A DNA stretch of 64,000 bases from the IMG/VR virus record IMGVR_UViG_3300029258_003221, positions 62,001-126,000 of that record. One strand, 5' to 3'. A program made the translations under genes and the position numbers. Positions 147 through 54,229 of this stretch are shown piece by piece; within the stretch, counting starts at the first letter, position 1; the number at the start of each line of letters is the position of its first letter. The notes under the pieces are model-generated. The model did not search any database and was not told the origin of the DNA. It saw nothing but the letters and a program-made list of their open reading frames with translations.

Positions 147-1106
147 ATGCAAGGAATTCGTGTAAAGTACATTTTGTATCCGATGTCAATCATAATGAGC
201 ATAGTCATGTTAATTGGCATCAGTATAAGAGTGCAAAGAGCAAACGTTCTGGAAATATCTGTTGATAACTCTAATCCAGAATTGACGATGCCTATCGTTG
301 AAAATGACCCTTATGCACACTTGGCTGCAAATGTAGCTCCTGTTCCCAAAAGAGGAATTGAGTATCGAAAATGGTTGCAGGCTTCTGTTAGAATTCGAGT
401 ATCTTATGCATCAGGTTCAGGCACTATTGTCTATTACGATGATAAAACAGGTTGGGCATACATTCAGACATGTGGCCATCTTTGGGGTGGCATGAAAAGC
501 AACATGTCAGCCGAAGAAGGTAAACGAAGAAAAGAAAAATGTCGTATCAATGTTTTTTATCACAACGAAAAGAAACTTGATCAACCAAAAACATACAGTG
601 CAGATGTGTTGTATTACAATAACAGAGGTGGTCCCGGTGGTGGACACGATTGTGCGTTAATTCGATTTAAGCCCGATTGGAAACCAAATTATTTTCCTAT
701 TGCACCTTCAGATTATCGATATAAACCGGGCTCAATGTTACATTCAACTGGATGCGATGGCGCAACAGAAGCTGCACATTATGATGTGCGTGTCATTGGG
801 TTTTCTAATTCTTCTCAGTTTCCAAGTTTGGTCACTACAGAAAACAGTCCAAGACCCGGACGTTCGGGTGGAGGATTGATGAATGACAGTTATTTTGTGG
901 CTATTTGCTGGGGCACTTCAGATCGTTCTGGTAATGGTAACGGGTTCTTTACACCATTGAGTACAGTACGATATTACAACGAAAAAAATGGATTTGGTTG
1001 GCTTAATGATGTTGGAAGTAGTTTGGCAAGACAAATCCCAATTAAAGACAGAAACAACCCTCAAAGAAGGTATGAACCAGATTACATTCCATTGCCGGGA
1101 CGTTAA
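147..1106 (+). CDS. membrane-anchored trypsin-like serine protease
   Basis: GSGT..TCGH, HDCALI and GRSGGG give the His/Asp/Ser triad; N-terminal hydrophobic helix; GGAG before ATG147. Confidence 0.85.
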   Translation: MQGIRVKYILYPMSIIMSIVMLIGISIRVQRANVLEISVDNSNPELTMPIVENDPYAHLAANVAPVPKRGIEYRKWLQASVRIRVSYASGSGTIVYYDDKTGWAYIQTCGHLWGGMKSNMSAEEGKRRKEKCRINVFYHNEKKLDQPKTYSADVLYYNNRGGPGGGHDCALIRFKPDWKPNYFPIAPSDYRYKPGSMLHSTGCDGATEAAHYDVRVIGFSNSSQFPSLVTTENSPRPGRSGGGLMNDSYFVAICWGTSDRSGNGNGFFTPLSTVRYYNEKNGFGWLNDVGSSLARQIPIKDRNNPQRRYEPDYIPLPGR

Positions 1107-1468
1107 ACGTTGTCTCTCCAAGCTTTACCGAGTTCGCCGATGTGATCAGAATGTACAACAGTATCAAAATCCTGTTGTGCTAGTTGGAGCAATTGTCTCG
1201 CATATCCTTGTCGCCTAACATCTGGCATTGTGTAAACATTGGCAATTTGGGCATTAGTTCCATCTCTTGATACAACCTGAAGGGCACTAACAGCCTGCCC
1301 ATCAACCATGTAAATGTATCGATAAGAACCATGCGGTGAGACATACTTCACCGCACCATTCTTAGTGTCACCGCCCAAATTTTCTTCTGGGCCAATCTGA
1401 CTGGTTTGACCTGCTGGACTCAGAAGGTATTGCAGCATTTCATTTTCTAACCAAAGTTTAAACTTCAT
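1103..1468 (-). CDS. GNAT acetyltransferase with capsid-targeting-like N-terminus
   Basis: IANVYTMPDVRRQGYARQLL = acetyl-CoA-binding motif A; starts MKFKLWLENE. Confidence 0.85.
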   Translation of the reverse strand: MKFKLWLENEMLQYLLSPAGQTSQIGPEENLGGDTKNGAVKYVSPHGSYRYIYMVDGQAVSALQVVSRDGTNAQIANVYTMPDVRRQGYARQLLQLAQQDFDTVVHSDHIGELGKAWRDNV

Positions 1469-37540: not shown

Positions 37541-38080
37541 TTACCTCCCTGATTTTATTATTTGATCTTGATTAGGCAGCCTGTCACTTGTGTAAACAAC
37601 AAGCCAATTTGTATCTACATCAAATCTGTAGGGACAATATGTTTCTTCGTCCCAAGCAACATCGGTGGGAAACTTAACTGAGTATTGTTGTAACACCATA
37701 CACAAAGGGCCATCTGCCAAAAGCTGCCTGCATTCAAATTTACAAATAACAGGTGGTTTGAAAGGAGCACCACCTTCTTCACCTTCTCTTGGATAAACGG
37801 CACTTTGTATTTTTCTAAGATCGTTTAAGTTTTCTGTTGCATCTTCTTTCTTTGTTACAAAGAAGTGAAATTGAATATTGATACTTCTATCATTAGAGTA
37901 ATGATAAGTGTATAAAGGAAAAGAACGACCCATAATTGCTTCATTGTTATAAACAGCCGATTTAGAGTCGCTTATTTCAGGTAAGTTGTTTAAAGTAATG
38001 GTTCCTGCATTGGGAATGATCAATTCACAATTTTCAATAGGATTTAAATCACCAGTTCTGGGATTAGTTGAAAGTGTCAT
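37541..38080 (-). CDS. tail tube initiator (gp48/gp54-like)
   Basis: ISDSKSAVY..IMGRSFP..RSINIQF..YPR..PPVI; follows the tape measure gene. Confidence 0.75.
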   Translation of the reverse strand: MTLSTNPRTGDLNPIENCELIIPNAGTITLNNLPEISDSKSAVYNNEAIMGRSFPLYTYHYSNDRSINIQFHFFVTKKEDATENLNDLRKIQSAVYPREGEEGGAPFKPPVICKFECRQLLADGPLCMVLQQYSVKFPTDVAWDEETYCPYRFDVDTNWLVVYTSDRLPNQDQIIKSGR

Positions 38081-41000
38081 TATTTCCTCCTGCCGTCACC
38101 AGTCACATTTCCTTGTGAGTAAGCACCCGGTTGAAGCTCCCAGTTGCCCACTAGGTTACCACGAGCAATTCGTTTCAACATAGTTCTTTGTCGCAAAGGT
38201 GAACCAGCTTCTGGTGGATTGACTGAATTATTTGATCCACCAATTCCATCTGATCGAATTCCAACAAGTTCTTCTATGATTCTGTCAAGCTTTTCACTTT
38301 GTGTTCCTATCAGATAATCTGAAATAGAAGCCATGCTTGGCACAACAGACGTTTGGCCACTTTCAGAACCGTATTTTTCTCTTTCCATATATGTTTCGGC
38401 ATCATCTTGAGAATACATTGCTGGAGAAACAAAAGCAGATGCTTTCTCTTCGTAGTCCATTTGATTTGGAATGATTGCTGTTTGTTCTTTTTTCTTTTCT
38501 CCTCTTGCATCCAACATAGCTCTGGCTTGTGTGTCTAATGCTTTTGCAGCCTGTAATCCATCAAACAAACCTTCATTAGATAAACTCATCCTAGCTGCAA
38601 CTTCTGCACTGGCTGGAGCAACAGAATCTTCCTGTTGTTCTTTCAACATTCTTTCATAGTTGGCTTTGTCTTTGGGGGTAGCTGTTCCTGCATCTATCTT
38701 TCTCTTTAAGCCATGTAAGCCGATGTCGTATCCGAGATCTTTATGTTTGTCTTTGACCTTCTTGAGTTCTTCATCAACTTTACCCATGTTGCCCAACACA
38801 TAATCTTTAACATAAGTGTAAGCATTACCAATGCCTTCTCCAACTTTTTCACCAGCCCAACTAAATATGCCACTAAGATAAGTAAAGCCTTTTGTCAATT
38901 TACCATCTGGCCCAAGACCAATTGCTTCAGTTAGACTAAAGTTGTAAAGCCAATCCGGCACTTGCATGCCAGTCAATGTTTCAAAACCCCAAACTCCTAA
39001 ATCTTTCACAGCATCAACTAAATCTGTTGACAATCCAGCTACAGCTCCTGCAAAAAAGTTTGCACCTCTTGCTCCACCTTTTTGTGCTTCTGTCATTTCG
39101 TTCCAAGATTTACCATATACAGAAGCCATTCTATCAAGCTGCTCTGCATCTTGTGTAAAGCCTCTTGTTATACCTCCGAGAGCAGCAGCCAATGGACGAA
39201 TGGCTTTGCCTGCCATTTGACCCGCTGCCGCTAATTTTGAAAAACCTAAAGCTTTGCCTCCAATACCCGCCACATCCGTCATTACAGCACCAGTTAAAGC
39301 TGCACCTAAGCCAGCTTCCGCAGCACCAACAGCATTTTCTGCTGTTGTTGGTGCCGCAGCAGGTGGTCCATCTGTATAATTTCCTGCTGCCGTTGCTGCC
39401 GTACCACCTCCACCAGTAGCAAGAGCGGCAACGTCTCCTCCAAGACAACGACACAAATCTTCCCAGTTAACAACGAAAACTGGCGTTGCATCTCCTTCCA
39501 TTGGTAAATCATCGCCGCCACCACTAAACTTTGAGCTAAGCCAAGCTCCTGCTCCAGCAGCTAATCCTAATCCAGCAGCCAATGCACCAAATCGACCTCT
39601 TGCTCGTGGGGCTCTTCTGGGTGCCCTTGGTGCTCTTCTTGGTCCAGATCTACCTGTGGCTTGTCTCCATCTTCTTCTTCCCATTGTACCGGCTCTTCTT
39701 CGCCAGCCTCCACGAGCACGGCCAGCAGCACCAGCGGCACCTGCCCCTGCACCAGCACCTCCCAAGAAGCCACCGCCACCGCCACCGCCACCGCCACCAA
39801 ACATTCCACGAACAGCACCGATTGCTCTAAGTGCCGCAATTGCCGTTAGAATGGAAGCAAGTAAAGTTGCAGCCAATTCAACGCCTATCAAAATTTGCAA
39901 ACCTTTCTCAGTTAACCAAGCTCTAATTTGCGTGAGTATTTCATGGATTTTTCCATTCCATTTCTGTATTTCAAAAATAGCATCCGTTACAGGGTCTTCA
40001 GCTTTCTTTTCTGCTGTGGCCAATTGTTGCTGAATTTCCTGAAGTGCTATATTGGCAGCTTCATCTCCTTTTGACAAAGCATCTTTAAATTGATCAACGC
40101 TATCAAAACCTTTACCTTTCAACATGTCGGCAAAGCTTTCACCGGATTCTGTGGCTTTCTGAGAGAACAACTGAAGCATTGTGTCCAATTGACCTTCTAT
40201 GCCAGCTCCTCTAAATTGCTTTGCAAAATCTTCACCGTATTTTGCAGTCAGTTCTTTATCCCAAAGCTCCATAGATTTTTTAGTCATGCCTCCACCGTCT
40301 TTTACGATTTGAGACAAAGAACTAAATGAATCCATCAAAGCTGTTTCTTGATATTCTCTTAGACGTTTGTTGGCTTCTTTTGCAGCGTCCGTACCTCTTC
40401 CTTGAGCATCAAGTCCACCTGCTGCTTTTATTTCATCTTGAATTGCTTTTACATTTTCTTCGTAAGTTCTGGATGATGCTTGGAATCCTTGAATTACCCT
40501 TGCCATTTCACCCGGTTTCATTCCATAAAACTGACCAAACAAAGTATCAAGTCGAGCAGCTTTATCTCTATCTGCTGCATCACCTGCTCTCAACCTTTGA
40601 ATTAATGTATCAATGTTGGCAATATCAAATCCTCCTTTGATTCCATACTGCGATTCAATTACTTGATCTGTAAGACCCATGCTTGCAAACATCTTCTTCA
40701 TTTGATTTGCAGCATTGTCGGCAAACATTCTTGTGTCTTGTCTTGTGTCAAGCAATGTACCCTGATAAAGTTTTCTTTGTATGTCAGGATTAGTTGAACT
40801 ACCTGCAAGTAATGTCAATAACTTAATTGTTTTAGGGTCAGCAGAAAAGAATTCAGATCGACCTGACATGGCTTGAATTAATGGTGAAGCAGCATCTCCT
40901 ACTCCAAGTTTTTCCATAGATGCAGAAATAGCAATAAGGTTGTTGGCTGCTTCGGCTGTCAAGGCACCCGAGTCACGCATGAGTTTCAAATACTTTTCTG

Positions 41001-42210
41001 CATTTTTAACAGCATGCTCAAGAGCCTTACCTGTTACCCCAGTAGCTCTGGCGGTTTGTTGCATTCCACGACTTATTTTGCCAAGTTCAATGGCTGAAAG
41101 ACCTAATTCCAAATGCCAATCCATAAACATGTCACCCATAACCTCAGCATTCATGCTAAGTTGATGAGCGGTATGTAAAGCAGTAACAGCAATTGCTTTT
41201 TGTCTTTTGTGTCTTAACTTATATCTTCTATCTTCAAGCTCCTGCCTTTTCTGCATTGTTTTGGCATTTTTTAAATTTTCTTTATGCAAAAGTCTTTGAG
41301 CTTTAGTTTCTGCTTCAAAGCCTCTTTGCACATTTTTCATGTGCTGTTTTTCATATTCAGTAGCCCACAAACCAGTCATTTCTACTACGTCTGATAAATC
41401 TAACCATTCTTTTTCCATGGCTTTATTCAACTTGCCATGACCTTGAACTTCAAAAAGAGTGGCTCGTATATTTCGAACAAAAGTATCTGGACCTGTAATG
41501 GCATCTCGGAATATATCTGTGAAATTAATTCCTACTGCTGAACGTATTCCTCCTAGAAAATCACCTATCCAACTTAAAGCACTTGCGGCAAAAGCAGTTC
41601 CATAAGCACCCAGTGGGTTTCCTCCAGAAGGTGCACCACCCCCACCAGAACCTCCCATGCCTCTACCACCACCGCCACCTACTGGTGGCAATTTACTTCG
41701 TCCAGCAATTGGTGCAATTGGTGGTGCACTTACTTTTGTGTCTCTTGCACAACACTGTCTTACAATTGTTTCGTTTAACATTGTTGCCATTTGATGCATG
41801 GCTTTGTTGTCAAACTTAGACAGACCGACCCAAATGGTGTTTTTGCTTTTTGCTTCAGCAAGAAGTGTTGATGTTGAATCGGCAATTACTTTGAGAAGCT
41901 TACCTTCAACGCTTCCTGATTTGCCGCCACCTTTGACTTTTTGATTTTTGGATTTTCTTTTTCCTTCTATGTCTTTTTTAACATCAACGACTTTTTTGGT
42001 CCATTCTTTTGTGGATTTCAACATAGAATCCAAAGACATGTTTTCTATTTTATCGGACAATGCATCAACGCTGTCACGTATTTGAGCCATGGCATCAGTT
42101 TGCTGTGAATCTGAAACCTGCATGACAACATTGTTTGAGTTTGACAGCATTCCCTGAGAGAGAGCCTCAGCAGAAATGCCTTGTGATGATCTTCCGAATA
42201 GGTCTGCCAT
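38080..42210 (-). CDS. tail tape measure protein
   Basis: 1376-aa A/G-rich helical protein with hydrophobic segments in the canonical position. Confidence 0.85.
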   Translation of the reverse strand: MADLFGRSSQGISAEALSQGMLSNSNNVVMQVSDSQQTDAMAQIRDSVDALSDKIENMSLDSMLKSTKEWTKKVVDVKKDIEGKRKSKNQKVKGGGKSGSVEGKLLKVIADSTSTLLAEAKSKNTIWVGLSKFDNKAMHQMATMLNETIVRQCCARDTKVSAPPIAPIAGRSKLPPVGGGGGRGMGGSGGGGAPSGGNPLGAYGTAFAASALSWIGDFLGGIRSAVGINFTDIFRDAITGPDTFVRNIRATLFEVQGHGKLNKAMEKEWLDLSDVVEMTGLWATEYEKQHMKNVQRGFEAETKAQRLLHKENLKNAKTMQKRQELEDRRYKLRHKRQKAIAVTALHTAHQLSMNAEVMGDMFMDWHLELGLSAIELGKISRGMQQTARATGVTGKALEHAVKNAEKYLKLMRDSGALTAEAANNLIAISASMEKLGVGDAASPLIQAMSGRSEFFSADPKTIKLLTLLAGSSTNPDIQRKLYQGTLLDTRQDTRMFADNAANQMKKMFASMGLTDQVIESQYGIKGGFDIANIDTLIQRLRAGDAADRDKAARLDTLFGQFYGMKPGEMARVIQGFQASSRTYEENVKAIQDEIKAAGGLDAQGRGTDAAKEANKRLREYQETALMDSFSSLSQIVKDGGGMTKKSMELWDKELTAKYGEDFAKQFRGAGIEGQLDTMLQLFSQKATESGESFADMLKGKGFDSVDQFKDALSKGDEAANIALQEIQQQLATAEKKAEDPVTDAIFEIQKWNGKIHEILTQIRAWLTEKGLQILIGVELAATLLASILTAIAALRAIGAVRGMFGGGGGGGGGGFLGGAGAGAGAAGAAGRARGGWRRRAGTMGRRRWRQATGRSGPRRAPRAPRRAPRARGRFGALAAGLGLAAGAGAWLSSKFSGGGDDLPMEGDATPVFVVNWEDLCRCLGGDVAALATGGGGTAATAAGNYTDGPPAAAPTTAENAVGAAEAGLGAALTGAVMTDVAGIGGKALGFSKLAAAGQMAGKAIRPLAAALGGITRGFTQDAEQLDRMASVYGKSWNEMTEAQKGGARGANFFAGAVAGLSTDLVDAVKDLGVWGFETLTGMQVPDWLYNFSLTEAIGLGPDGKLTKGFTYLSGIFSWAGEKVGEGIGNAYTYVKDYVLGNMGKVDEELKKVKDKHKDLGYDIGLHGLKRKIDAGTATPKDKANYERMLKEQQEDSVAPASAEVAARMSLSNEGLFDGLQAAKALDTQARAMLDARGEKKKEQTAIIPNQMDYEEKASAFVSPAMYSQDDAETYMEREKYGSESGQTSVVPSMASISDYLIGTQSEKLDRIIEELVGIRSDGIGGSNNSVNPPEAGSPLRQRTMLKRIARGNLVGNWELQPGAYSQGNVTGDGRRK

Positions 42211-42839
42211 TATTCTATGCTATTTGAATTTGGTTGTATTAAATTTCGATCCACTCCTCCCTGAATGATATCTTGGGCACCTTGGACCTTTCTGTCCAAA
42301 CTTATCTGTTGCCCTTTAAGCAAAGCATTTCTGAAATCTTCATAAGAAGTAAGTTCTTCAGCTTTAGCTTGTAATCTTGATTGTATTTGTGCTCGTATTT
42401 GATCTTGTAATTTTTGTAGTTCACTTTCAGAAAAGGATCGGACAGCTCCCATGACCTGAAGCAACCAATCACAATCCATTCTTTTTACTCGTCGCATACC
42501 CATTCGATTATACATTCGAAAAGATCCGGCAACGTACTTGTCAGACTTGATACTAGAGTAGGAAAAACCTGTATTATCACAATGTGCTTGTAATAATCTT
42601 TTGATGAATGGAAATGTCAAATAGTGTAAATTGACGCCACGAACAAAAGTTGGCCAAATATCAGTGACAATTACCATAGGGTAAGGATCATGTATGATGT
42701 TTGGTGTTCGCTTGGCATAAGAAATAGGATAATTAAAAGCAATTAAAGAACCACGTGCAATTTTCTTAACACTTGGCCCATATTGATTGGCAGCAAGTTG
42801 GTTTACAGGATCAAAATCTTTGAACAAACCTTCTGCCAT
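42210..42839 (-). CDS. DNA end protector (T4 gp2-like)
   Basis: DPYPMVIV..RGVNLHYL motif. Confidence 0.7.
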   Translation of the reverse strand: MAEGLFKDFDPVNQLAANQYGPSVKKIARGSLIAFNYPISYAKRTPNIIHDPYPMVIVTDIWPTFVRGVNLHYLTFPFIKRLLQAHCDNTGFSYSSIKSDKYVAGSFRMYNRMGMRRVKRMDCDWLLQVMGAVRSFSESELQKLQDQIRAQIQSRLQAKAEELTSYEDFRNALLKGQQISLDRKVQGAQDIIQGGVDRNLIQPNSNSIE

Positions 42840-42854
42840 GCCTTTCCTTATTTT

Positions 42855-43361
42855 TTATGATTTGCTATGAACAAGTGAGCTGTAATCAGTCCCTGTTGTT
42901 CTCACCAGAACATTACCAGCGTGCTCAGGATCACCTTCAACAGTTGCTTTTCTTTCGTCTCGTTCAGCATCAATACTTTTCTCAAAGAATTTTTTGACTT
43001 CCTTGCCAACCATTTCTATGACTCTTTCACCAGCTTTTTTCTGATCTACATTTTCATCGCTGAGAAGGTCATGAAACATTTCTTCGACATTTAAAGGATA
43101 TGCTGTGCCATAAGGGTGGGTTTGGCTTTCTTTCTGAATACGAAAGGCGAGACGATCTCCAACTCTATATATGCGGATGCCGTCAAAACTCGCTCCTCCC
43201 ATTGGGTTAAGACAAAAAATGTAAGGATCATCTTTTTCATCTGTTTCAAGATGACTCTCTACTTTCATTCCATTGCGTTCAAAAAGTTTCTTCAACAAAC
43301 CTAGTTGTTTCAAAGTATCTCTTTGTTTCTTGTCTATGAAATCTCCAAATGTTTTACGCAT
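42855..43361 (-). CDS. hypothetical protein
   Basis: GAGG RBS; starts MRKTFGDFID. Confidence 0.7.
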   Translation of the reverse strand: MRKTFGDFIDKKQRDTLKQLGLLKKLFERNGMKVESHLETDEKDDPYIFCLNPMGGASFDGIRIYRVGDRLAFRIQKESQTHPYGTAYPLNVEEMFHDLLSDENVDQKKAGERVIEMVGKEVKKFFEKSIDAERDERKATVEGDPEHAGNVLVRTTGTDYSSLVHSKS

Positions 43362-43368
43362 TATTACC

Positions 43369-44664
43369 TCAGCAGTTTCTCATAATCATTTCAGGAGTTG
43401 ATGGGACACACCGTTTGATTCTCAAAAGATCAGTTGGGTTTCCATTGTATGGAGCTTCTTGAACAATCATTCCCTGTAAAGACATAGATGCCTCTTTGAT
43501 CAAAGACAATTGTGCTGAAAGATACAATACGCCATCTCTATGATCGATAAATTCCAGTTCTTCTGTGTTTGGTCTCCCTTCAATGTCAATTTCCCCATCT
43601 TCCTTGACATAATAAATACTCATATTAGGAATTGGAATGATTGAACCCTGTTCATCAATAAATGCCTCTTTGGCATCTGAGTTTTTAGATCGAACAACCA
43701 ATTTTCCATCTAAGTAAGCACTTTTGAGAGATGTCCCTAAATCCCAACCCAGATGTTGAACTGTACCATCACTTCCAACAACATTAATGATGAAGGCTCT
43801 TTCTCTGAAGTGTTCAGCAATTGATTCAATCACAACACGCCTGCGAAGAACATCTTTTTCTTCAGGGCTTCCATTTTCCAAACGTTCGAGTTCAGCTTCT
43901 TTGAGATACCGTTCAGGATCATCTTCTTTCAAAAACCAACGTCCCAAATTAACATCGCCCCACTTAGACAAAAATCTAGTAGACATTCGGATGGAATAAT
44001 CAGACTCTTCAAATACAAGGTCTTCATTAACGCCACCACTACCGACTTGAACAGAACCTGTTAAAGCTCCAATGAACTTTCTGTGTTGATCCATTTTGCC
44101 GCCACCCAAGCCGGAAATTTTGATGAAAACATCATTCATCATTGGGTTTTGTTCTAAGACCTGAACAATGTGAGCCAATACAGATGTTGCTGGATTGGTT
44201 CTGTCCAAATCTTTTTTGATCAATTTTCGAATTTCATTTGATGATTGAAACACATTTGAGTTTTGTCTCACAAAGTTAATTTGAAGATTGTCTTCAACAA
44301 ACTTGCGAGGATTTGGCTCTAAATCACGATCTCGAATTTCTCCAATCATAGAGATCAACTTTTCCGGGTCTCCTTTGATTGATTCCTGAATGTATTTGAC
44401 TTTCCAGATTTCGAAATCATCTTCCTCGTTTTCTTCGGGCATGTCCGGGTATTGAGGATCATCTGTAATATCATCAAGTCCCTGTTGGTCAACAGACATT
44501 TGATTTGGATCTGGTGGCATAGCCGATTGATCTCCCGTGCCCATTGGGTCACCGGGACCACCCGGTTGACTCATAGGCGGTCCACCAGCACCCATGTCTG
44601 GTTGACCACCAGCAGGTGGGATGTCAAATTCAACTAGCCAATCTTCAAGGTTTCTATTTCCCAT
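43369..44664 (-). CDS. hypothetical morphogenesis-region protein with P/G/M/Q-rich N-terminus
   Basis: 431-aa operonic ORF. Confidence 0.7.
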   Translation of the reverse strand: MGNRNLEDWLVEFDIPPAGGQPDMGAGGPPMSQPGGPGDPMGTGDQSAMPPDPNQMSVDQQGLDDITDDPQYPDMPEENEEDDFEIWKVKYIQESIKGDPEKLISMIGEIRDRDLEPNPRKFVEDNLQINFVRQNSNVFQSSNEIRKLIKKDLDRTNPATSVLAHIVQVLEQNPMMNDVFIKISGLGGGKMDQHRKFIGALTGSVQVGSGGVNEDLVFEESDYSIRMSTRFLSKWGDVNLGRWFLKEDDPERYLKEAELERLENGSPEEKDVLRRRVVIESIAEHFRERAFIINVVGSDGTVQHLGWDLGTSLKSAYLDGKLVVRSKNSDAKEAFIDEQGSIIPIPNMSIYYVKEDGEIDIEGRPNTEELEFIDHRDGVLYLSAQLSLIKEASMSLQGMIVQEAPYNGNPTDLLRIKRCVPSTPEMIMRNC

Positions 44665-45181
44665 TGTTTTTCGCCTTTTCCTCCAACTGCTTCAAAAAAT
44701 CCCTTTTGCCGCTGCCATCAAATACAATTTTGTTGTTCTGCTGGGATGCTAGGTATCTAGGGAATGTATCTCGTTCCTTCAACTTGATGCGTGTCATTAA
44801 ATCAGCGATCTTGGTCATTTTGTCAGAGATGTCTGATTTAACCTTCATAAGATTCACAATTGCTTCTTTGCTCGCAGATGAACTTTCTCCGTCATTTAAC
44901 ACCATGTTGACAAAATTCGCCAAAAGATCATCTGATTGTTCTCTGTCATTACGAGCGTTTTCTAATATCTCTTCATAGAGACCTACGAGTACTTCATCTC
45001 CTACAATACACTCCTGAGTATCGTCAGGAGCACATTTCACTTCCATTTTTGGAACAAGATCTTCAATCTCAATGTCTATTTCCTCAGCAGTTTCTGCTGT
45101 GTCTTCAATTTCAGGATTGACTTCTTCTTGTTCCTCATTTGGAACATTTACATCTTCTGGATTGTTCTTTTCTTCTGTCAT
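44654..45181 (-). CDS. acidic helical protein (possibly terminase small subunit-like)
   Basis: CATATATA 5 nt upstream; helical core; function is a guess. Confidence 0.55.
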   Translation of the reverse strand: MTEEKNNPEDVNVPNEEQEEVNPEIEDTAETAEEIDIEIEDLVPKMEVKCAPDDTQECIVGDEVLVGLYEEILENARNDREQSDDLLANFVNMVLNDGESSSASKEAIVNLMKVKSDISDKMTKIADLMTRIKLKERDTFPRYLASQQNNKIVFDGSGKRDFLKQLEEKAKNNGK

Positions 45182-45225: not shown

Positions 45226-45615
45226 ATGGGAGAAGATCTTTCAGTACAAATACTATCTCAGACTTCTGACAACATCCAAAAGTTATTCGATCTTAGTACT
45301 CGAATTGACGAACGGGTGAAATCCATGCAGAACAAACAGCGGGATTTAAACACTAGAATAGACAATATTGTGAATGCTCATAATGAATTGATGCAATCAG
45401 TTGCTGTTCTTAAATCCAGTGCAAATACTGTCAGTATAGAAGAGTGCAAAAGGCAAATTGTGGATTTGGATAAAAGGCTGTCCAGTGTTGAGCAAAAGTC
45501 TGAAGGTATGGAAAATAGATGGACAAGTATCTTTAAGTTCATCGTTCAGATTATTTGGCTCGTTGTTGGAGCTTGGATATTGTTCAAATTAGGGCTCACA
45601 CCTCCTCCATTGTAA
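45226..45615 (+). CDS. coiled-coil protein with C-terminal transmembrane helix (holin/XhlA-like)
   Basis: Heptads followed by FIVQIIWLVVGAWILF. Confidence 0.6.
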   Translation: MGEDLSVQILSQTSDNIQKLFDLSTRIDERVKSMQNKQRDLNTRIDNIVNAHNELMQSVAVLKSSANTVSIEECKRQIVDLDKRLSSVEQKSEGMENRWTSIFKFIVQIIWLVVGAWILFKLGLTPPPL

Positions 45616-45682: not shown

Positions 45683-47137
45683 ATGAAAAAGTTTCATGAA
45701 TACATTGAACTCAAAGAAGCAACTGAGGAAAAGAAGTCATCTGGACCTGATCCTTTGAATGCAAAAATAACACTTGGTGATGGCAATGACTATGAGCCAT
45801 TTACAGTAAGTGATGATCCAAATAGTGAAAACTACGGAAAAAACAGAGGTCTTGCCCCAATTATTCGTGCTTTCAAAAAGGGCGGAAACTGGGGTTGGAG
45901 CAAGGATGACAAAACTGGAGAAGACAAACCAGTTAAAATCAGCGGTAAGAAGCTTTACCTGACAGGCGGTGCTGTTCGTGACCACCTTGCAGGCAAGACT
46001 CCCAGAAACATAGAACTCGCCACTAACGCATCTCCTGACGAGGTCTATCATATTCTGAAACAAAACAACTTCACGTTCTCAGATGGTGAAACTAAAGGCA
46101 AGAAAACAAACCAGTTCTCTGTAAAGTCAAAAGATCCAAATGGAAGACCATTTGCATTTGAAATTAATGTTGGTGATGACACATATGAACTGGAAATCTT
46201 CACCAAAACTCCAAAAGGAAGCGAAGAGCCAGAACCCGGCACACAATCGGATGATGCCGCAGGTCGTGATTTCACCATGAATGCTATGTCGATTCTTCTG
46301 TCAACTGACAATGGTGACAACAAAGAACTTCATGATTTCTATGGTGGTATGCACCATTTAGCCAATGGTAAAGTTCAAACGATTGGTGATATGGAAACCA
46401 GTTTTTCTGATGATCCAAAGCGAATGCTGAGATTCGGTAGAATGGTTTCTGGATATGGCGATCCAGCGAAAATTACTGATGATGAAAAAGCAACTGTTCA
46501 AAAACTTGCTTCTTTGATTTCAAAACTTGATCCAAATGATGTTATGGATGATTTTGATAAAGGCATGAAAAAAGATGATTGTGATCCTCGTAAACACCTT
46601 CAGATTTTTGGTGACCTTGGACTTTTAGGTGCAATTTTCCCGGATATGTCCGTAGATGAATCTTTCCCCAAAGAACTCACAGAACTTGGTGACAGAAACA
46701 TGGCTCTTGCTTGGATGTTGCGACACAACCACCCAGCAAGACTTAATGAAATTGGACTCGGTCCAGATGATGAAAAGATTGCTTTCTTGGTTCGCTCTTT
46801 GAATCTTGGGTTGGGACTTGATGAACATATGCTCGATCAGGCAACCACAAGCTTCACTCGATCAGGTGTGTCAGCCAGAAAATTAAAGAAATGGCTGACT
46901 GTTATGGGCAAAGTTGATGAAGGAACAGTCGATGCATTTTTGAAGCATGCTACTTCACCACGAGTCAAAGTTTATGTAATGAAGGATGATGGCTCAGAGG
47001 GTGTTCGAGAAGAGTTTGAAGATCTGTTTGATCCATTCACGGGACAACCGACTAACCATCAAATGCTTGAAAACCGCAAACGTGAAATGGAGTACAAGAA
47101 CTATCTGAAACACGTTGAGTTCTGTAAACCTGCTTAG
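45683..47137 (+). CDS. class II tRNA nucleotidyltransferase (CCA/polyA) homolog with altered catalytic residues
   Basis: YLTGGAVRD, RDFTMNA, DFYGG, DDPKRMLR; the DxD motif reads NIE. Confidence 0.85.
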   Translation: MKKFHEYIELKEATEEKKSSGPDPLNAKITLGDGNDYEPFTVSDDPNSENYGKNRGLAPIIRAFKKGGNWGWSKDDKTGEDKPVKISGKKLYLTGGAVRDHLAGKTPRNIELATNASPDEVYHILKQNNFTFSDGETKGKKTNQFSVKSKDPNGRPFAFEINVGDDTYELEIFTKTPKGSEEPEPGTQSDDAAGRDFTMNAMSILLSTDNGDNKELHDFYGGMHHLANGKVQTIGDMETSFSDDPKRMLRFGRMVSGYGDPAKITDDEKATVQKLASLISKLDPNDVMDDFDKGMKKDDCDPRKHLQIFGDLGLLGAIFPDMSVDESFPKELTELGDRNMALAWMLRHNHPARLNEIGLGPDDEKIAFLVRSLNLGLGLDEHMLDQATTSFTRSGVSARKLKKWLTVMGKVDEGTVDAFLKHATSPRVKVYVMKDDGSEGVREEFEDLFDPFTGQPTNHQMLENRKREMEYKNYLKHVEFCKPA

Positions 47138-47145
47138 GAGAATTG

Positions 47146-47445
47146 ATGAAAACATTTGAACAATGGTTTGAATCAAAACAACGACAATATGAAAGCAAGC
47201 CTTTTCAAAACTTGCGACATTTTTATGGCTTCATGGAAAAATTCTTTCCTGATCTTGATGCAAAAAGCATTGATTTTCATAGGAATCTGCCTGATTTAGA
47301 ACACATGCACGGAGTGTTGAATGGTCCCTTTGGTAGAAAGTGGATCAATTCTGCTCGAAATAAACTGTTTGGAATGGGAGCACGACAGAAAGTAACAGGT
47401 GCCAATGTAGGAAACATAGAATTAGGGCCGAAAGTAATACGATAA
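47146..47445 (+). CDS. small protein with capsid-targeting-like N-terminus
   Basis: Starts MKTFEQWFES; AGGAG RBS. Confidence 0.7.
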   Translation: MKTFEQWFESKQRQYESKPFQNLRHFYGFMEKFFPDLDAKSIDFHRNLPDLEHMHGVLNGPFGRKWINSARNKLFGMGARQKVTGANVGNIELGPKVIR

Positions 47446-47457
47446 AAATCTCAGTCT

Positions 47458-47940
47458 ATGAATTTTAAGAAATGGATAGAATCTGTTTGGTATCACGGCA
47501 CGCAGAGTGGAAATGAAATTCGCCAGTCTGGTCAAATTGATATTTCAACTTCTGGTGGCGGGCAACGTGGTTTAAAAGGCGTTTGGCTCACAAGAGATCC
47601 ATCTTACGCTAATCTTTACGCCAAAGCATCAAGAGAAAATCCCAGACAACCTGAAATTTTACAAGTTGAAGTTCCCGACAACCTCAACATTGCCGATTTT
47701 TATGCTATTCAAAATTCTCTTGGCATAAATGATGCAGAAAGAGCTATGTGGAAATTTGTCGGGTTTGATGTTGATGATTTTGCATCCATGCAACCTGTGC
47801 GTGATATGCAGCCATTTGCTATGACTAAATTACTTCAACAACAAGGGTATGATGGGGCTTTAATTCCAAATACCATACAAAAAGGCGGGGAACCTGAATT
47901 GGTTATTTTTAACCCCGGAAATGTTCGATTGATTGCATAA
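47458..47940 (+). CDS. ADP-ribosyltransferase-like protein (ART-PolyVal type)
   Basis: WYHGT, GVWLT..YA..YA, GYDG, ELVIFNP; starts MNFKKWIES. Confidence 0.7.
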   Translation: MNFKKWIESVWYHGTQSGNEIRQSGQIDISTSGGGQRGLKGVWLTRDPSYANLYAKASRENPRQPEILQVEVPDNLNIADFYAIQNSLGINDAERAMWKFVGFDVDDFASMQPVRDMQPFAMTKLLQQQGYDGALIPNTIQKGGEPELVIFNPGNVRLIA

Positions 47941-47992: not shown

Positions 47993-48418
47993 TTAGCGGA
48001 CAGGTGCTGGAGCTTCGTTGATGTTTGCTTCGGCTGGTTCACTTGCCGGTGCTGGTGCCACTTTCACTGCATTAACAGATTCACTGACTGGTCCAGCAAC
48101 AGATTCTCTGACTGGAGCAGGGGCAGATTCTCTAACTACAGTGTTAGATTTCACAGTTTCTGTTGATCCCGCTGGTGGAAAACAAATTCCATTCTTGCAG
48201 TTCGGTCGAACAACAGGTTTTGACTGGATGACACGTGAGCTTATCACACGTGGCTGGTGATAAATGATTCTGGATGGCTGACACCTGTAATAGGTGCGAC
48301 AGCTATTGTATGTGTAGCAACTGTTAGATCGATAACAGGAGCTAGGACAATTTCCAGCTTCAGCGAACGAAGGCAGCGCAAACAACATCGCTGCCGCCAT
48401 GGTAATTCCAAATTTCAT
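47993..48418 (-). CDS. secreted Cys/Pro/Ala-rich small protein
   Basis: GGAGG RBS, signal peptide ending AEA, CKNGIC motif. Confidence 0.7.
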   Translation of the reverse strand: MKFGITMAAAMLFALPSFAEAGNCPSSCYRSNSCYTYNSCRTYYRCQPSRIIYHQPRVISSRVIQSKPVVRPNCKNGICFPPAGSTETVKSNTVVRESAPAPVRESVAGPVSESVNAVKVAPAPASEPAEANINEAPAPVR

Positions 48419-48616
48419 GTTTTCCTCCGTGGGAGTTTTTGACAAAGAGCCTTTTGCTCTCAACTGTAGTTAGTGGTTCTTAAACAAGAAACCACACGTC
48501 AGTTCAATTTAGTTTGTCCTTTGAGGCACGACAACCCTTCAGCATTGAAATTTTTGATTTATCTGGTAACTTACTCTAAAGAAGATGTGTCTTTAAAAGA
48601 CAATCAGGAGAACACA

Positions 48617-49258
48617 ATGCAAAAATTGCAAATTTTCGATTTTGACGGCACCCTTGTCTTCACGCCTACCGATAACGCAAAAACTCGGAAATTGTTTGAA
48701 GATGAAACTGGCATTCCATGGGTAATTGACAAAAAACTTGCCAGAAAGCTTACAAATCGACTGGGAAGACCCATCACAATGCGTAAGGGATGGTTTGGGC
48801 GCAAAGAAACCCTTGAACCACCACTTGTTCCCAATCCAACACCAGATGAAATGATCAATCGAAGTGTTTGTGATCTTTTTCTACAGTCAAAACAAGACGA
48901 AAATGCTCTAACTGTCATGATGACTGGTCGTCATGAAGGTTTGCGATCTCACGTTCTTCGTATTTTGAATGATGTTGGATTGGTTGACGTAAAATATGAA
49001 GATGGCAAAGCAATTCAAACTGATTCCGATGTCGTTTGCTATTTAAATGGCAATAATGGTCCAGCTCCAGAGATCGTTGGACAAAAGCCGCATGAAACAC
49101 ATCCATGGAAAATCTGGATTCTCGAACAGCTCATTCATGTTGGAAATTATGATTTGATTGAGATTTGGGAAGATCGTAAGAAGTATATCAAACCATTTGA
49201 AGAATTTGGTGAAAGTATTGAAGAGGACTTTGTCGTTCACTTTGTGGAGGGAAATTGA
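48617..49258 (+). CDS. HAD phosphatase, Swiss-Army-Knife RNA-repair type (HAD_SAK_1-like)
   Basis: FDFDGTL, MTGR, K, IWEDR; AGGAG RBS. Confidence 0.8.
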   Translation: MQKLQIFDFDGTLVFTPTDNAKTRKLFEDETGIPWVIDKKLARKLTNRLGRPITMRKGWFGRKETLEPPLVPNPTPDEMINRSVCDLFLQSKQDENALTVMMTGRHEGLRSHVLRILNDVGLVDVKYEDGKAIQTDSDVVCYLNGNNGPAPEIVGQKPHETHPWKIWILEQLIHVGNYDLIEIWEDRKKYIKPFEEFGESIEEDFVVHFVEGN

Positions 49259-49566
49259 GAAACGATTGGTTAAAACGAAGTTGGAAATTACATTGTTGGA
49301 CAGATAGACTTGTTTTACACATTTGCAAAGGTCCATATAGATATTCAGTGCCTGTTGATTCATTGCGGCATCTTAGAAATCAATTTGGCCTTAGTCCTAT
49401 AATTGAACTTGCATATACTGCAAAAACACAACTTATTGGAGGTTCATTTGGGCTTCCTTCAAGGGCAAGTGTTTCAAAAGAAGAATTTCAAAAGATCATT
49501 AAAGTCATTCATTCATTTAATGAAACGGTTGATGGGAAAATTATTCCCTGTCCACAATGGCCTTAA
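49255..49566 (+). CDS. hypothetical protein
   Basis: Coupled start (TTGA overlap) after GGAGG. Confidence 0.55.
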   Translation: MRNDWLKRSWKLHCWTDRLVLHICKGPYRYSVPVDSLRHLRNQFGLSPIIELAYTAKTQLIGGSFGLPSRASVSKEEFQKIIKVIHSFNETVDGKIIPCPQWP

Positions 49567-50084
49567 TCATCCCATGGCATTTTCGAACGCCGGATTTGAT
49601 CTGGCGTTATATCACTTTGCCAACGCTGAAACATATTTTGAATTGCATCTTTTGGTACGCCATGTTTATTGCGTTGTGCTAAAACTTCAGCAGCCGAATC
49701 TAAGGCCGATTGATCCTTTCTGCTCATTGCATCTTTGATGTTGTTCCAAATATCACTTTGTGGTTCTTGGATTCTAATATCATAGTCAAATTTGTCAGCA
49801 AGTAAAACATAGGGTTTTGCTTCCCAAGCTTCGATATTTGTATTGTCTACAATAATTGGAGAAACGCTTTTCTTCATAGCTTCTGCGACACGATTCACAT
49901 TCCATTGATGAGCTTCAGGTAATTTTTCTGGATCAAAGTTATATTCTTTTCCAAAAAAATCATCAGTGGAAAAAGATTGCCCACCTAAAGTTTGAGAGAT
50001 CGTTGACTTTCCTGTGCCACTCGGGCCACGAATGATGTAAACGATCTTCTCAACATCTTCTAACCATGTACGGAATGAGTTCAT
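49563..50084 (-). CDS. N4BP2/CNPase-like P-loop polynucleotide kinase (AAA_33)
   Basis: IRGPSGTGKST, STDDFF, IVDNTN..WE..PY, RNKHGVP; starts MNSFRTWLED. Confidence 0.88.
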   Translation of the reverse strand: MNSFRTWLEDVEKIVYIIRGPSGTGKSTISQTLGGQSFSTDDFFGKEYNFDPEKLPEAHQWNVNRVAEAMKKSVSPIIVDNTNIEAWEAKPYVLLADKFDYDIRIQEPQSDIWNNIKDAMSRKDQSALDSAAEVLAQRNKHGVPKDAIQNMFQRWQSDITPDQIRRSKMPWDD

Positions 50085-53509: not shown

Positions 53510-54229
53510 ATGCGAAAAGCTGCATTGTATGTTCACGGACGTGTTGTTGTCGCTGATAGTCATCTGGCAGCATTTCAAGCACTAACCATCGAAGAACGTC
53601 GTGAATACATAGTATCAGGATTTATTGATGATGAAACGGGTGAGTTCGACAGCGATCTTGCCCGTGATCATTTTTACAATAAGGAAATTTATCTTGTTAG
53701 ACATGGCGAGGTAGAAAACAAAGATGCTCCTGATCCTCCTATTACAGAAATAGGAATCGAACAAGCAGAATGTGTAGCTGAAGAATTAACAGATGTAGAT
53801 CTTTCTGGGTTTACCTGTCGCACAAGTCCTTATCTTCGTTGTCTTCAAACAGCACAGGTTTTCTCAAGAATTTGCAATCTTGAATTTACGGTTGATCTTT
53901 CTTTGATGGAAACTCCTATGTTCCTTTCAAATAATCAATCTTTCAGATTGAAGAATCGCCACAAAGAATTCCCTCAGTTCAATTGGCCCACTAACCATGA
54001 TTGGCTGATTCCTTTTGAGGGAAAAAACAAATTCGCTGTTCGTGTCAAAAACGTATTGCAGGATTTGCCTATCCATAGCATTCTAATATCACATTTTGGC
54101 GTAATCACAAATATGGCCAGCATGGCTTTGTGTGACGAAAAGGCAATGGAATATGGCGTTCCAACTGCATCTCTCACACACATAGACAATCAAGAAGTTA
54201 AATGTCTGGGTTGGACTTGCAAAAATTGA
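53510..54229 (+). CDS. histidine phosphatase family protein
   Basis: YLVRHGE, TSPYLRCLQTA, ISHFGVI. Confidence 0.88.
   Translation: MRKAALYVHGRVVVADSHLAAFQALTIEERREYIVSGFIDDETGEFDSDLARDHFYNKEIYLVRHGEVENKDAPDPPITEIGIEQAECVAEELTDVDLSGFTCRTSPYLRCLQTAQVFSRICNLEFTVDLSLMETPMFLSNNQSFRLKNRHKEFPQFNWPTNHDWLIPFEGKNKFAVRVKNVLQDLPIHSILISHFGVITNMASMALCDEKAMEYGVPTASLTHIDNQEVKCLGWTCKN

What the first reader, a model, noticed from the sequence alone, without database searches (positions are those of the whole stretch)
45683..47137. CCA-adding enzyme homolog with rewired catalytic and templating motifs
Seen: motif A reads GGAVRD..PRNIELAT, so the metal-binding DxD is N-x-E (46007-46015). RRD reads GRD, and the EDxxR template reads DDPKR. 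It also has a capsid-targeting-like N-terminus. Known: DxD is essential in class II nucleotidyltransferases. Inference: a pseudo-enzyme or altered-specificity enzyme, such as a tRNA-end binding or shielding protein or a nucleotide sponge. The phage's own tRNA lacks an encoded CCA, so it needs an active enzyme from elsewhere if this one is dead.
Basis: partly seen in the sequence, partly recalled or inferred. Interest (0 to 1): 0.65.

Follow-up and report, generated by a model that had tools for sequence, protein, structure and literature searches.

The report
Phage CCA-enzyme homolog lacking catalytic aspartates
A huge marine phage carries a full-length look-alike of the enzyme that adds CCA to tRNA ends, but its metal-binding residues were replaced long ago and kept that way across hundreds of related phages, so it most likely binds nucleic-acid ends or nucleotides rather than extending them, and may be delivered inside the virion.

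Summary
ORF 45683-47137(+) encodes a 484-aa class II tRNA-nucleotidyltransferase homolog. Its motifs read N109-I-E111 for DxD, G194-R-D for RRD and D243-D-P-K-R for EDxxR.

The gene is not decaying.
- 120 orthologs at 49-76% identity keep N (88%) and E (94%), and none has RRD.
- Synonymous sites are saturated while pN is 0.15-0.34.
- A sister clade of about 240 proteins reads NxD/NRD/EDxxT.
- All lie in one conserved position beside head and tail genes of huge phages.
- Only one ortholog, in megaphage LR756511, keeps DxD/RRD/EDxxR, and that phage has no second copy.
- Two relatives with the altered form (G001, 91% complete; G005, 64%) also carry a separate canonical CCA-adding enzyme.

The predicted structure (pLDDT 91) matches whole CCA-adding enzymes (Z up to 24.7). 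It adds a very conserved N-terminal elaboration of the head domain.

The first 12 residues closely resemble the T4 internal-protein capsid-targeting sequence. The genome also encodes a T4-type prohead protease.

Best reading: a conserved, non-polymerising or rewired CCA-enzyme derivative that still binds nucleotides or 3' ends, possibly ejected with the DNA. It sits next to RNA-end-healing genes (HAD_SAK_1, AAA_33 kinase). Function was not tested. This is a new variant of a known kind.

The parts
45683..47137 (+). ORF of the class II nucleotidyltransferase homolog (484 aa, P0001). The stop is TAG at 47135-47137, followed by GAG AAT TGA.
45683..45718 (+). Residues 1-12, MKKFHEYIELKE: T4-type capsid-targeting-like leader ending in L-x-E before Ala.
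   Evidence: F4 is conserved in both clades. The family consensus is MxxKSFxEYxxLREA and the sister clade has the same leader. Compared with T4 ipI/ipII/ipIII. The roles of positions 4, 7, 8 and 10 come from PMC9026906.
45719..45751 (+). Residues 13-23: variable, low-confidence linker.
   Evidence: pLDDT is under 50 at residues 17-21. Length and composition vary in the alignment.
45752..45958 (+). Residues 24-92: lineage-specific elaboration of the head domain (two beta-hairpins around the canonical first helix). It holds the clade-specific SDDPxSExYGKN loop and the NWGWS motif.
   Evidence: Mean column identity is 83% against 60% for the whole protein. pLDDT is about 90 in the full model but 58.6 when folded alone. 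Structural alignments of CCA enzymes start at model residue 25-59.
45953..46375 (+). PolyA_pol head domain (residues 91-231).
46007..46015 (+). N109-I-E111 in place of the metal-binding DxD.
46187..46189 (+). E169, the counterpart of the Glu in the canonical 'xEvatfR' strand. It is not conserved in the family.
   Evidence: E61 S19 T19 D13 N3 K2 of 120. Aligned to the EFEIATFR of canonical copies.
46262..46270 (+). G194-R-D in place of RRD (motif B).
   Evidence: G85 S32 and never R in 120 sequences.
46334..46360 (+). Motif C, DFYGGMHHL (canonical D..GG..DL).
46409..46423 (+). D243-D-P-K-R, counterpart of the EDxxR nucleotide template.
45226..45615 (+). XhlA/hemolysin-like coiled-coil protein with a C-terminal membrane helix. 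It lies directly upstream in the syntenic loci L002-L017.
47146..47445 (+). 99-aa protein with a leader of the same type (MKTFEQWFES). It appears translationally coupled (GGAG at 47137-47140).
47458..47940 (+). ART-PolyVal-like ADP-ribosyltransferase candidate (below the Pfam cut-off) with a MNFKKWIES leader.
   Evidence: 29.7 bits against a cut-off of 31.2. It lies directly after the focal gene in L036.
48617..49258 (+). HAD_SAK_1 phosphatase with an intact FDFDGTL motif. It is the recurrent downstream neighbour.
49563..50084 (-). AAA_33 P-loop kinase with a MNSFRTWLED leader.
42210..42839 (-). DNA end protector-like gene (T4 gp2 type). It is part of the conserved structural block next to the focal gene.

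Best explanation
The gene encodes a conserved derivative of a phage CCA-adding enzyme that no longer works as a two-metal polymerase.

What it keeps and adds: the complete head-neck-body-tail architecture and most of the nucleotide cradle (GGxVRD, D191, R195-D196, D218-x-x-GG, D244, R247). It adds a highly conserved elaboration of the head domain.

What it has lost: the first metal-binding Asp, the first Arg of RRD, and a fixed third carboxylate.

Most likely action: it binds a nucleotide and/or the 3' end of a structured nucleic acid (tRNA-like acceptor end) without extending it. It probably acts alongside the adjacent end-healing genes (HAD_SAK_1 phosphatase, AAA_33 kinase). CCA synthesis itself is left to a separate canonical phage enzyme or to the host.

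Likely delivery: its leader suggests that it is packaged into the head through a T4-type capsid-targeting sequence, trimmed by the prohead protease after L-K-E12, and ejected with the DNA.

Shown: the fold, the residue changes, their conservation and age, the synteny, the second canonical copy in relatives, and the presence of the protease.

Inferred: loss of polymerase activity, the ligand, packaging, and the link to RNA-end repair.
For: Fold:
- Pfam and PHROG assignments.
- AF2 model pLDDT 91.
- Full-length structural matches to class II CCA-adding enzymes: Z = 24.7, 358 residues aligned to 4x4w; Z = 20.5 to 1miv.

Residue changes:
- The changes were fixed by profile alignment.
- In 120 orthologs, position 109 is N105/D9/H4/T1 and position 111 is E113/Q5/D1.
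- Position 194 is never R, and E169 is acidic in only 74/120.
- Full-length orthologs reading NxQ, DxQ and TxQ exist, so two carboxylates are dispensable.

Selection:
- pS is 0.75-0.92 (saturated) against pN 0.15-0.34.
- dN/dS is about 0.035 for the nearest pair.
- The N and E codons vary synonymously: AAC/AAT and GAA/GAG.

Age:
- The sister clade (237 hits) is mostly NxD/NRD/EDxxT.
- It has the same synteny.
- One loss in the common ancestor is compatible with the tree.

Division of labour:
- G001 (459 kb, 91% complete) and G005/G006 have a second copy with DxD/RRD/EDxxR. In G001 it is fused to an HD domain.
- LR756511, whose syntenic copy is canonical, has no other copy.

Experimental background:
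- In E. coli CCA-adding enzyme, DxA and AxA variants are inactive.
- Randomising the second Asp to D/E/G/V/A returned only Asp, 15 of 15 (PMC6468291).

Leader:
- Compared with T4 leaders, and the functional positions come from PMC9026906.
- It is conserved in both clades and followed by a hypervariable linker.
- A Peptidase_S77 prohead protease is present at 93.6 bits.

Context: HAD_SAK_1, AAA_33 and His_Phos_1 genes are nearby.
Against: - No activity or binding was measured.
- The motif A stretch (LxGGAVRDHLxGKxxRNxELxT) is among the most conserved parts of the protein, and N109 itself is selected. This would also fit an enzyme with altered chemistry rather than a non-enzyme.
- Asn and Glu can still ligate one metal.
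- Nine orthologs read DxE, and PMC6468291 states that DxD or DxE is the signature of these enzymes.
- The invariant D44-D45 of the clade-specific loop could in principle supply carboxylates. I could not inspect model coordinates to check this.
- The leader type also occurs on about a dozen other genes and on the canonical CCA enzyme of G001. Its enrichment over internal Met positions is only about 4-fold, so it may not mean packaging.
- No RNA ligase was found in the 44%-complete record.
- The complex prediction with the HAD protein gave no verdict.
Confidence: 0.55

Rival explanations
1. It is still an active nucleotidyltransferase. Its metal site has been rebuilt from N109, E111 and possibly acidic residues of the new N-terminal loop (D44, D45, E49). 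It adds nucleotides to tRNA or another RNA 3' end, perhaps with a different metal or different specificity.
For: - The active-site stretch is extremely conserved, and N109 and E111 are kept through synonymous codon changes.
- The nucleotide-template residues D244 and R247 are kept in this clade.
- His, Asp and Thr alternate with Asn at position 109, and all of them can act as ligands.
- The SDDPxSExYGKN loop exists only in the NxE clade.
- The N-terminal part folds confidently only together with the head domain.
- DxE is an accepted signature (PMC6468291).
Against: - NxQ, TxQ and DxQ orthologs exist.
- The sister clade at the same locus has one carboxylate at most, lacks the SDD loop, and has lost the template Arg.
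- The first Arg of RRD is never present.
- Relatives keep a separate canonical enzyme.
- In E. coli even Asp-to-Glu at the second position was not recovered in selection.
Confidence: 0.25
2. It is chiefly a virion component. It would be an internal head or ejection protein that uses the acceptor-stem-binding surface of the CCA-enzyme fold to hold the ends of the phage DNA, or another low-copy target, at the start of infection. It would have no role in tRNA metabolism.
For: - It holds a fixed position at the edge of the structural block, next to a gp2-type DNA end protector, in the syntenic loci L002-L018 of both clades.
- It has a T4-like leader and the genome encodes the prohead protease.
- In T4, ipI lies close to genes 2 and 4.
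- The family is essentially absent from cellular genomes: 1 small contig in 185,579 genomes.
Against: - There is no virion proteome.
- Nucleotide-binding motifs are kept, which such a role would not need.
- RNA-end-healing genes recur downstream.
- The protein is acidic, pI 5.45.
Confidence: 0.12
3. It is a nucleotide sponge or sensor. It would sequester or sense a nucleotide (an NTP or a defence signal) in the retained pocket.
For: The GGxVRD, RD, D218 and D244/R247 pocket residues are conserved. Pseudo-nucleotidyltransferases that only bind nucleotides are known from general knowledge (for example MiD51).
Against: - The pocket of this family is built for CTP and ATP, which are millimolar in cells.
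- The whole tRNA-binding body and tail are conserved too.
- The sister clade lost the template Arg.
Confidence: 0.05
4. It is a decaying gene whose catalytic substitutions are private accidents.
For: None, beyond the loss of canonical residues.
Against: - There are 515 + 237 homologs with the same changes.
- Mean column identity is 60%.
- dN/dS is far below 1.
- Frames are intact everywhere.
- Identical DNA recurs in seawater and sediment metagenomes of at least 5 studies.
Confidence: 0.01

Closest known systems
Class II CCA-adding enzymes / poly(A) polymerase I (Pfam PolyA_pol; e.g. human TRNT1 4x4w, B. stearothermophilus 1miv, E. coli PcnB 3aqk)
   Same: - The head domain matches by sequence.
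- The whole head-neck-body-tail fold matches (Z 20-25).
- The GGxVRD, RD-FT-N, D..GG and (E)DxxR motifs are shared.
   Different: - DxD is NxE.
- RRD is G/S-RD.
- The Glu of the xEvatfR strand is not conserved.
- GGxxDL is GGxHHL.
- There is an extra conserved elaboration of about 65 residues plus a leader peptide.
- The family is phage-only and sits in a fixed position in a structural gene block.
Canonical phage CCA-adding enzymes of jumbo phages (RNA-repair set described in PMC7824862). Here these are the second copies in G001 (HD-fused, L026) and G005 (L027), and the syntenic ortholog in megaphage LR756511.
   Same: Same superfamily and same phage lineage. LR756511's gene is the positional ortholog and shares the leader, the N-terminal extension and GGxHHL.
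   Different: Those proteins keep DxD, RRD and EDxxR. The focal clade and its sister clade do not.
T4 internal proteins IPI/IPII/IPIII and Alt (head-packaged, protease-trimmed, ejected proteins)
   Same: - An N-terminal MK-x-[FY]-x-E-[FY]-I leader ends in Glu before Ala.
- The genome has a gp21-type protease.
- An ADP-ribosyltransferase-like gene with a similar leader lies two genes downstream.
   Different: The mature proteins share no sequence relationship. Packaging is not shown here. The leader type is also found on many other genes of this phage.
Pseudo-nucleotidyltransferases of the Pol-beta fold (general knowledge: MiD49/51, NF45/NF90 DZF domain, N-terminal domain of TUT4/7)
   Same: An NTase fold kept under selection after loss of catalytic carboxylates. 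NF90-NF45 appears as a weak structural match (Z 4.5).
   Different: These are unrelated subfamilies in eukaryotes. None derives from a class II CCA-adding enzyme.

Membership tests
PolyA_pol / class II nucleotidyltransferase superfamily (fold membership) | Head domain matches Pfam PF01743 above the gathering score. | tested here: met
   63.4 bits against a cut-off of 23, residues 91-231.
PolyA_pol / class II nucleotidyltransferase superfamily (fold membership) | Head-neck-body-tail architecture. | tested here: met
   The AF2 model (pLDDT 91) aligns over residues 25-476 to full-length CCA-adding enzymes, Z 18-25.
CCA-adding enzyme (functional family) | Motif A with two metal-binding carboxylates (DxD or DxE). 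| tested here: not met
   N109-I-E111. The family has N in 105/120, and NxQ and TxQ variants exist.
CCA-adding enzyme (functional family) | Motif B, RRD. | tested here: not met
   G194-R-D. Position 194 is G85/S32 and never R.
CCA-adding enzyme (functional family) | Motif D, EDxxR amino-acid template. | tested here: inconclusive
   The query reads DDPKR, so Asp and Arg are kept and Glu is replaced by Asp. The family consensus is EDPxR. Near relatives read KDPKR and the sister clade reads EDxxT.
CCA-adding enzyme (functional family) | Score above NCBIfam equivalog cut-offs. | tested here: not met
   The best score is 94 bits against 438.8 (TIGR02692). The canonical phage copy L026 also fails (131.5 against 290), so this test discriminates poorly.
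CCA-adding enzyme (functional family) | CTP/ATP incorporation onto tRNA 3' ends. | not testable with these tools
   Needs a biochemical assay.
T4-type capsid-targeted, protease-processed head proteins | N-terminal targeting sequence with aromatic residues at positions 4 and 7 and a processing site [LI]-x-E. | tested here: met
   The query has F4, Y7, I8 and L10-K11-E12|A13, against T4 MKTYQEFIAE|A. The positions come from PMC9026906. The leader is conserved in both clades.
T4-type capsid-targeted, protease-processed head proteins | Genome encodes a gp21-type prohead protease. | tested here: met
   PF03420, 93.6 bits, at record positions 41375-41794.
T4-type capsid-targeted, protease-processed head proteins | Protein present in virions with a trimmed N-terminus. 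| not testable with these tools
   There is no cultured relative and no proteome.
Phage RNA-end repair modules (HAD_SAK / kinase / ligase / CCA enzyme; PMC7824862) | Linked end-healing phosphatase and kinase. | tested here: met
   HAD_SAK_1 lies directly downstream in L035, L006 and L010, and within 2.5 kb here. AAA_33 kinase lies next to it.
Phage RNA-end repair modules (HAD_SAK / kinase / ligase / CCA enzyme; PMC7824862) | RNA ligase in the genome. | tested here: inconclusive
   No Rnl1, Rnl2 or RtcB match was found in the 234.6-kb record, which is only 44% complete. The Rnl1 control rang nowhere.

The most novel reading that the evidence does not exclude
A whole lineage of huge marine phages packages a catalytically disarmed CCA-adding-enzyme derivative into the capsid and ejects it with the DNA, possibly together with other leader-bearing enzymes (kinase, ADP-ribosyltransferase-like protein). 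Inside the host it would clamp a specific 3' end, either a tRNA-like target of a host defence system or the ends of the incoming genome, before any phage gene is expressed. This would be a new class of ejection protein and the first pseudo-enzyme derived from a class II tRNA nucleotidyltransferase.
Probability: 0.2. Interest if true: 0.8.

Novelty: new variant of a known kind. Interest (0 to 1): 0.6.

Why it matters
Phage CCA-adding enzymes are routinely annotated as tRNA-repair enzymes. JGI names many members of this family 'tRNA nucleotidyltransferase/poly(A) polymerase'.

This family has at least about 750 cluster representatives in huge-phage contigs of up to 670 kb. It lacks the residues needed for that reaction, yet it is a strongly constrained gene at a conserved position in its lineage. 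The annotation is therefore probably wrong for these proteins, and a different function is being selected.

If the protein is ejected from the virion, it would point to an unrecognised early-infection activity aimed at nucleic-acid 3' ends. It would also be a natural example of how a template-independent polymerase is converted into a binding protein or a different enzyme.

The question is directly testable with one recombinant protein.

Tried and rejected
- Complex prediction of the focal protein with the HAD_SAK_1 neighbour: no verdict (score 0.00). This is not evidence either way. I removed it and did not send it elsewhere.
- Folding residues 24-92 alone gave pLDDT 58.6, too poor for a fold search. 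I take this only as a hint that the part depends on the head domain.
- ESM Atlas search with residues 22-92 gave no usable lead.
- No tRNA (ARAGORN) and no Rfam family in the window.
- Rnl1, Rnl2 and RtcB were not found in the partial record.
- The first FastTree suggested two independent losses of DxD, with LR756511 nested in the sister clade. A better model on 39 rows gave a trichotomy compatible with a single loss, so I do not claim repeated loss.
- pI analysis was uninformative.
- Literature searches found no description of a DxD-less phage CCA-enzyme family or of a virion-borne one. The held library is incomplete.
- I did not run the large representative-protein search, because the word search already gave hundreds of relatives.
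- I did not lay reads. No RNA run holds the stretch.
Full report
**1. What is there.** The window is bases 62001-126000 of a 234.6-kb virus record that CheckV rates 44% complete. That points to a phage genome of roughly half a megabase. Near-identical DNA occurs in seawater and sediment metagenomes from at least five studies.

The ORF 45683-47137(+) encodes 484 residues. ATG 45683 has a GGAG 6 nt upstream, and homologs start at the same point. The stop is TAG, followed two codons later by TGA. The next gene starts at ATG 47146 behind its own GGAG.

**2. The observation.**
- Pfam finds a PolyA_pol head domain at residues 91-231 (63.4 bits, cut-off 23).
- PHROGs gives tRNA nucleotidyltransferase.
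- A profile of the family aligned to E. coli poly(A) polymerase I places N109 and E111 on the two aspartates of DxD. It places G194 on the first Arg of RRD. It aligns GGMHHL with GGMKDL and DDPKR with EDPVR.

**3. Fold.** AlphaFold2 with 120 homologs gives pLDDT 91 and pTM 0.83. The model matches whole class II CCA-adding enzymes and PcnB:
- Foldseek E down to 4e-13.
- VIA Z = 24.7 over 358 residues for human TRNT1 and Z = 20.5 for the B. stearothermophilus enzyme, spanning model residues about 25-476.

So the entire tRNA-enzyme architecture is kept. Residues 24-92 elaborate the canonical first helix with two beta-hairpins. This part is the best conserved of the protein (83% mean column identity against 60% overall). 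It folds confidently only in the context of the head domain.

**4. The substitutions are old and selected.** The word search gave 515 relatives. In 120 of them, at 49-76% identity:
- position 109 is N105/D9/H4/T1
- position 111 is E113/Q5/D1
- position 194 is G85/S32 and never R
- E169, the counterpart of the Glu in the canonical xEvatfR strand, is acidic in only 74

On the tree, D, H and T replace N in several separate tips, and DxQ, NxQ and TxQ forms occur in otherwise normal orthologs.

Synonymous sites are saturated (pS 0.75-0.92) while pN is 0.15-0.34. The nearest pair gives dN/dS of about 0.035. The N and E codons themselves change synonymously. Decay is excluded.

DDPKR, in contrast, is a local variant. 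The family consensus is EDPxR.

**5. Orthology and the wider clade.** The gene always follows the same block:
- a large protein of about 1400 residues
- a gp2-type DNA end protector
- three conserved minus-strand genes
- a plus-strand XhlA-like gene

This holds in the syntenic loci L002-L018, down to 31% identity.

A second search starting from one such distant ortholog found 237 more proteins. They are mostly NxD / NRD / EDxxT, so they have also lost the template Arg.

The single exception found is the positional ortholog in megaphage LR756511, which reads DxD, RRD, EDxxR. A mixture-model tree leaves it in a trichotomy with the two altered clades, so one ancient loss is sufficient.

Only one tiny contig among 185,579 cellular genomes holds a family member.

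**6. A second, intact enzyme.**
- The 234.6-kb record has no other PolyA_pol gene, but more than half of the genome is missing.
- G001 (459 kb, 91% complete) carries the NxE ortholog, 12 tRNAs, and a separate 720-residue protein. That protein has an HD domain fused to a canonical CCA-adding enzyme with DxD, RRD and EDxxR.
- G005/G006 carry the NxD form and also have a canonical copy.
- LR756511, whose syntenic copy is canonical, has no other copy in its 595 kb.

With only three lineages this is suggestive, not proven. It fits a division of labour in which CCA synthesis is done elsewhere.

The only tRNA in the present record is a suppressor tRNA(CUA) without encoded CCA. It lies outside the window.

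**7. Why loss of polymerase activity is likely.**
- The two-carboxylate motif is the signature of these enzymes.
- In the E. coli enzyme, DxA and AxA variants are inactive.
- Selection from D/E/G/V/A at the second position returned only Asp (PMC6468291).
- Here the first carboxylate is gone, the second can be Gln, and the third is not fixed.
- The sister clade at the same locus has one carboxylate at most.

Against a simply dead site, the motif A stretch is one of the most conserved segments in both clades, and the nucleotide-cradle residues persist. I therefore commit to a protein that still uses this pocket for binding a nucleotide or a 3' terminal residue but does not polymerise (0.55). I keep a rebuilt active site as the main rival (0.25). 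The clade-specific invariant loop S43-D44-D45...E49 is the obvious candidate to supply carboxylates. I could not check its position because model coordinates are not exposed.

**8. Leader and possible packaging.** Residues 1-12, MKKFHEYIELKE followed by Ala, resemble the leaders of T4 IPIII/IPII (MKTYQEFIAE|A) and IPI (MKTFKEF...), which I read from the T4 record.

In T4 the first ten residues suffice for head targeting. Positions 4 and 7 matter for targeting and positions 8 and 10 for processing, and cleavage follows Glu (PMC9026906).

The leader is conserved in both clades and is followed by a linker of very variable length and composition. The genome encodes a gp21-type prohead protease (93.6 bits).

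Similar leaders sit on the next two genes (one is ART-PolyVal-like, recalling T4 Alt). They also sit on the AAA_33 kinase and on the canonical CCA enzyme of G001. Enrichment over internal Met positions is about 4-fold (12 of 271 ORFs against 1.06%). Packaging is thus plausible but unproven.

If the protein is delivered in tens to hundreds of copies, a stoichiometric tRNA shield or NTP sponge is unlikely. A low-copy target would be expected instead.

**9. Context.** Downstream genes recur across relatives:
- HAD_SAK_1 phosphatase with intact FDFDGTL (52.3 bits). It is directly adjacent in L035, L006 and L010.
- AAA_33 kinase.
- His_Phos_1.

These are the usual end-healing partners of phage RNA repair (PMC7824862). 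A predicted complex with the HAD protein gave no verdict. No RNA ligase was found in the partial record.

The gene belongs to a large, phage-restricted, strongly constrained branch of the class II nucleotidyltransferase superfamily that has given up the canonical catalytic set. It fails the defining residue tests of a CCA-adding enzyme, so it should not be filed as one, although it clearly descends from one.

I found no description of such a family in the held literature. I rate it a new variant of a known kind, with interest 0.6.

Noticed in passing
record G000:C1:5677-5751 (outside the window, 56 kb upstream of its start): This is the only tRNA of the 234.6-kb record. It is a suppressor tRNA with anticodon CUA and no encoded CCA. 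TAG is the rarest stop (37 of 271 long ORFs). The focal gene ends in TAG, followed two codons later by TGA. This hints at possible late TAG read-through or recoding, but orthologs end at the same place with TAA or TGA.
   Followed up: partly
window 47146-47445(+), 47458-47940(+), 49563-50084(-), 42855-43361(-), 1103-1468(-); L026 721-2883(-): There is a recurring N-terminal motif M-x-x-[FW]-x-x-[FYW]-x-E, like the T4 capsid-targeting sequence. It occurs on about a dozen genes. These include an ART-PolyVal-like protein, an AAA_33 kinase and, in a relative, the canonical HD-fused CCA-adding enzyme. It may mark a set of head-packaged enzymes. Enrichment over internal Met positions is only about 4-fold.
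   Followed up: partly
window 47458-47940(+): A 160-aa protein matches ART-PolyVal (ADP-ribosyltransferase of polyvalent, injected proteins) just below the Pfam cut-off (29.7 against 31.2 bits). It lies directly after the focal gene in locus L036.
   Followed up: partly
window 48473-49258(+), 49563-50084(-), 53510-54229(+): This is a cluster of end-healing-type enzymes: HAD_SAK_1 phosphatase, AAA_33 kinase and a histidine phosphatase. For the HAD gene, the true start is probably ATG 48617, not GTG 48473. The HAD and His_Phos genes recur downstream of the focal gene in relatives.
   Followed up: partly
window 45226-45615(+): An XhlA/hemolysin-like coiled-coil protein with a C-terminal membrane helix. 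It lies directly upstream of the focal gene in the syntenic loci L002-L017. Its relation to the focal gene is unknown.
   Followed up: no
window 47993-48463(-): A small protein with a signal-peptide-like N-terminus and a Cys-, Tyr- and Ser-rich segment. It is inserted between the focal gene and the HAD gene and has no counterpart in the related loci.
   Followed up: no
window 38080-45181(-) compared with T4 (L037): The conserved minus-strand block includes a gp2-type DNA end protector. In T4, ipI lies near genes 2 and 4 in a similar arrangement, so the neighbourhood of an internal-protein gene and the DNA end protector may be ancient.
   Followed up: no
L038 (JAKQFZ010000652.1, 2.5-kb contig): This is the only family member in 185,579 cellular genomes. 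It sits on a short contig binned into a Candidatus Omnitrophota MAG. It is probably a mis-binned phage fragment and at most a weak host hint.
   Followed up: no
L020-L024 (IMG/VR contigs): Another, more distant group of phage PolyA_pol proteins also shows non-canonical first positions in motif A (SxD, ExD, YxD) and SRD instead of RRD. Loss of the first Asp may therefore be commoner among phage homologs than assumed. The alignment is less certain at this distance.
   Followed up: no
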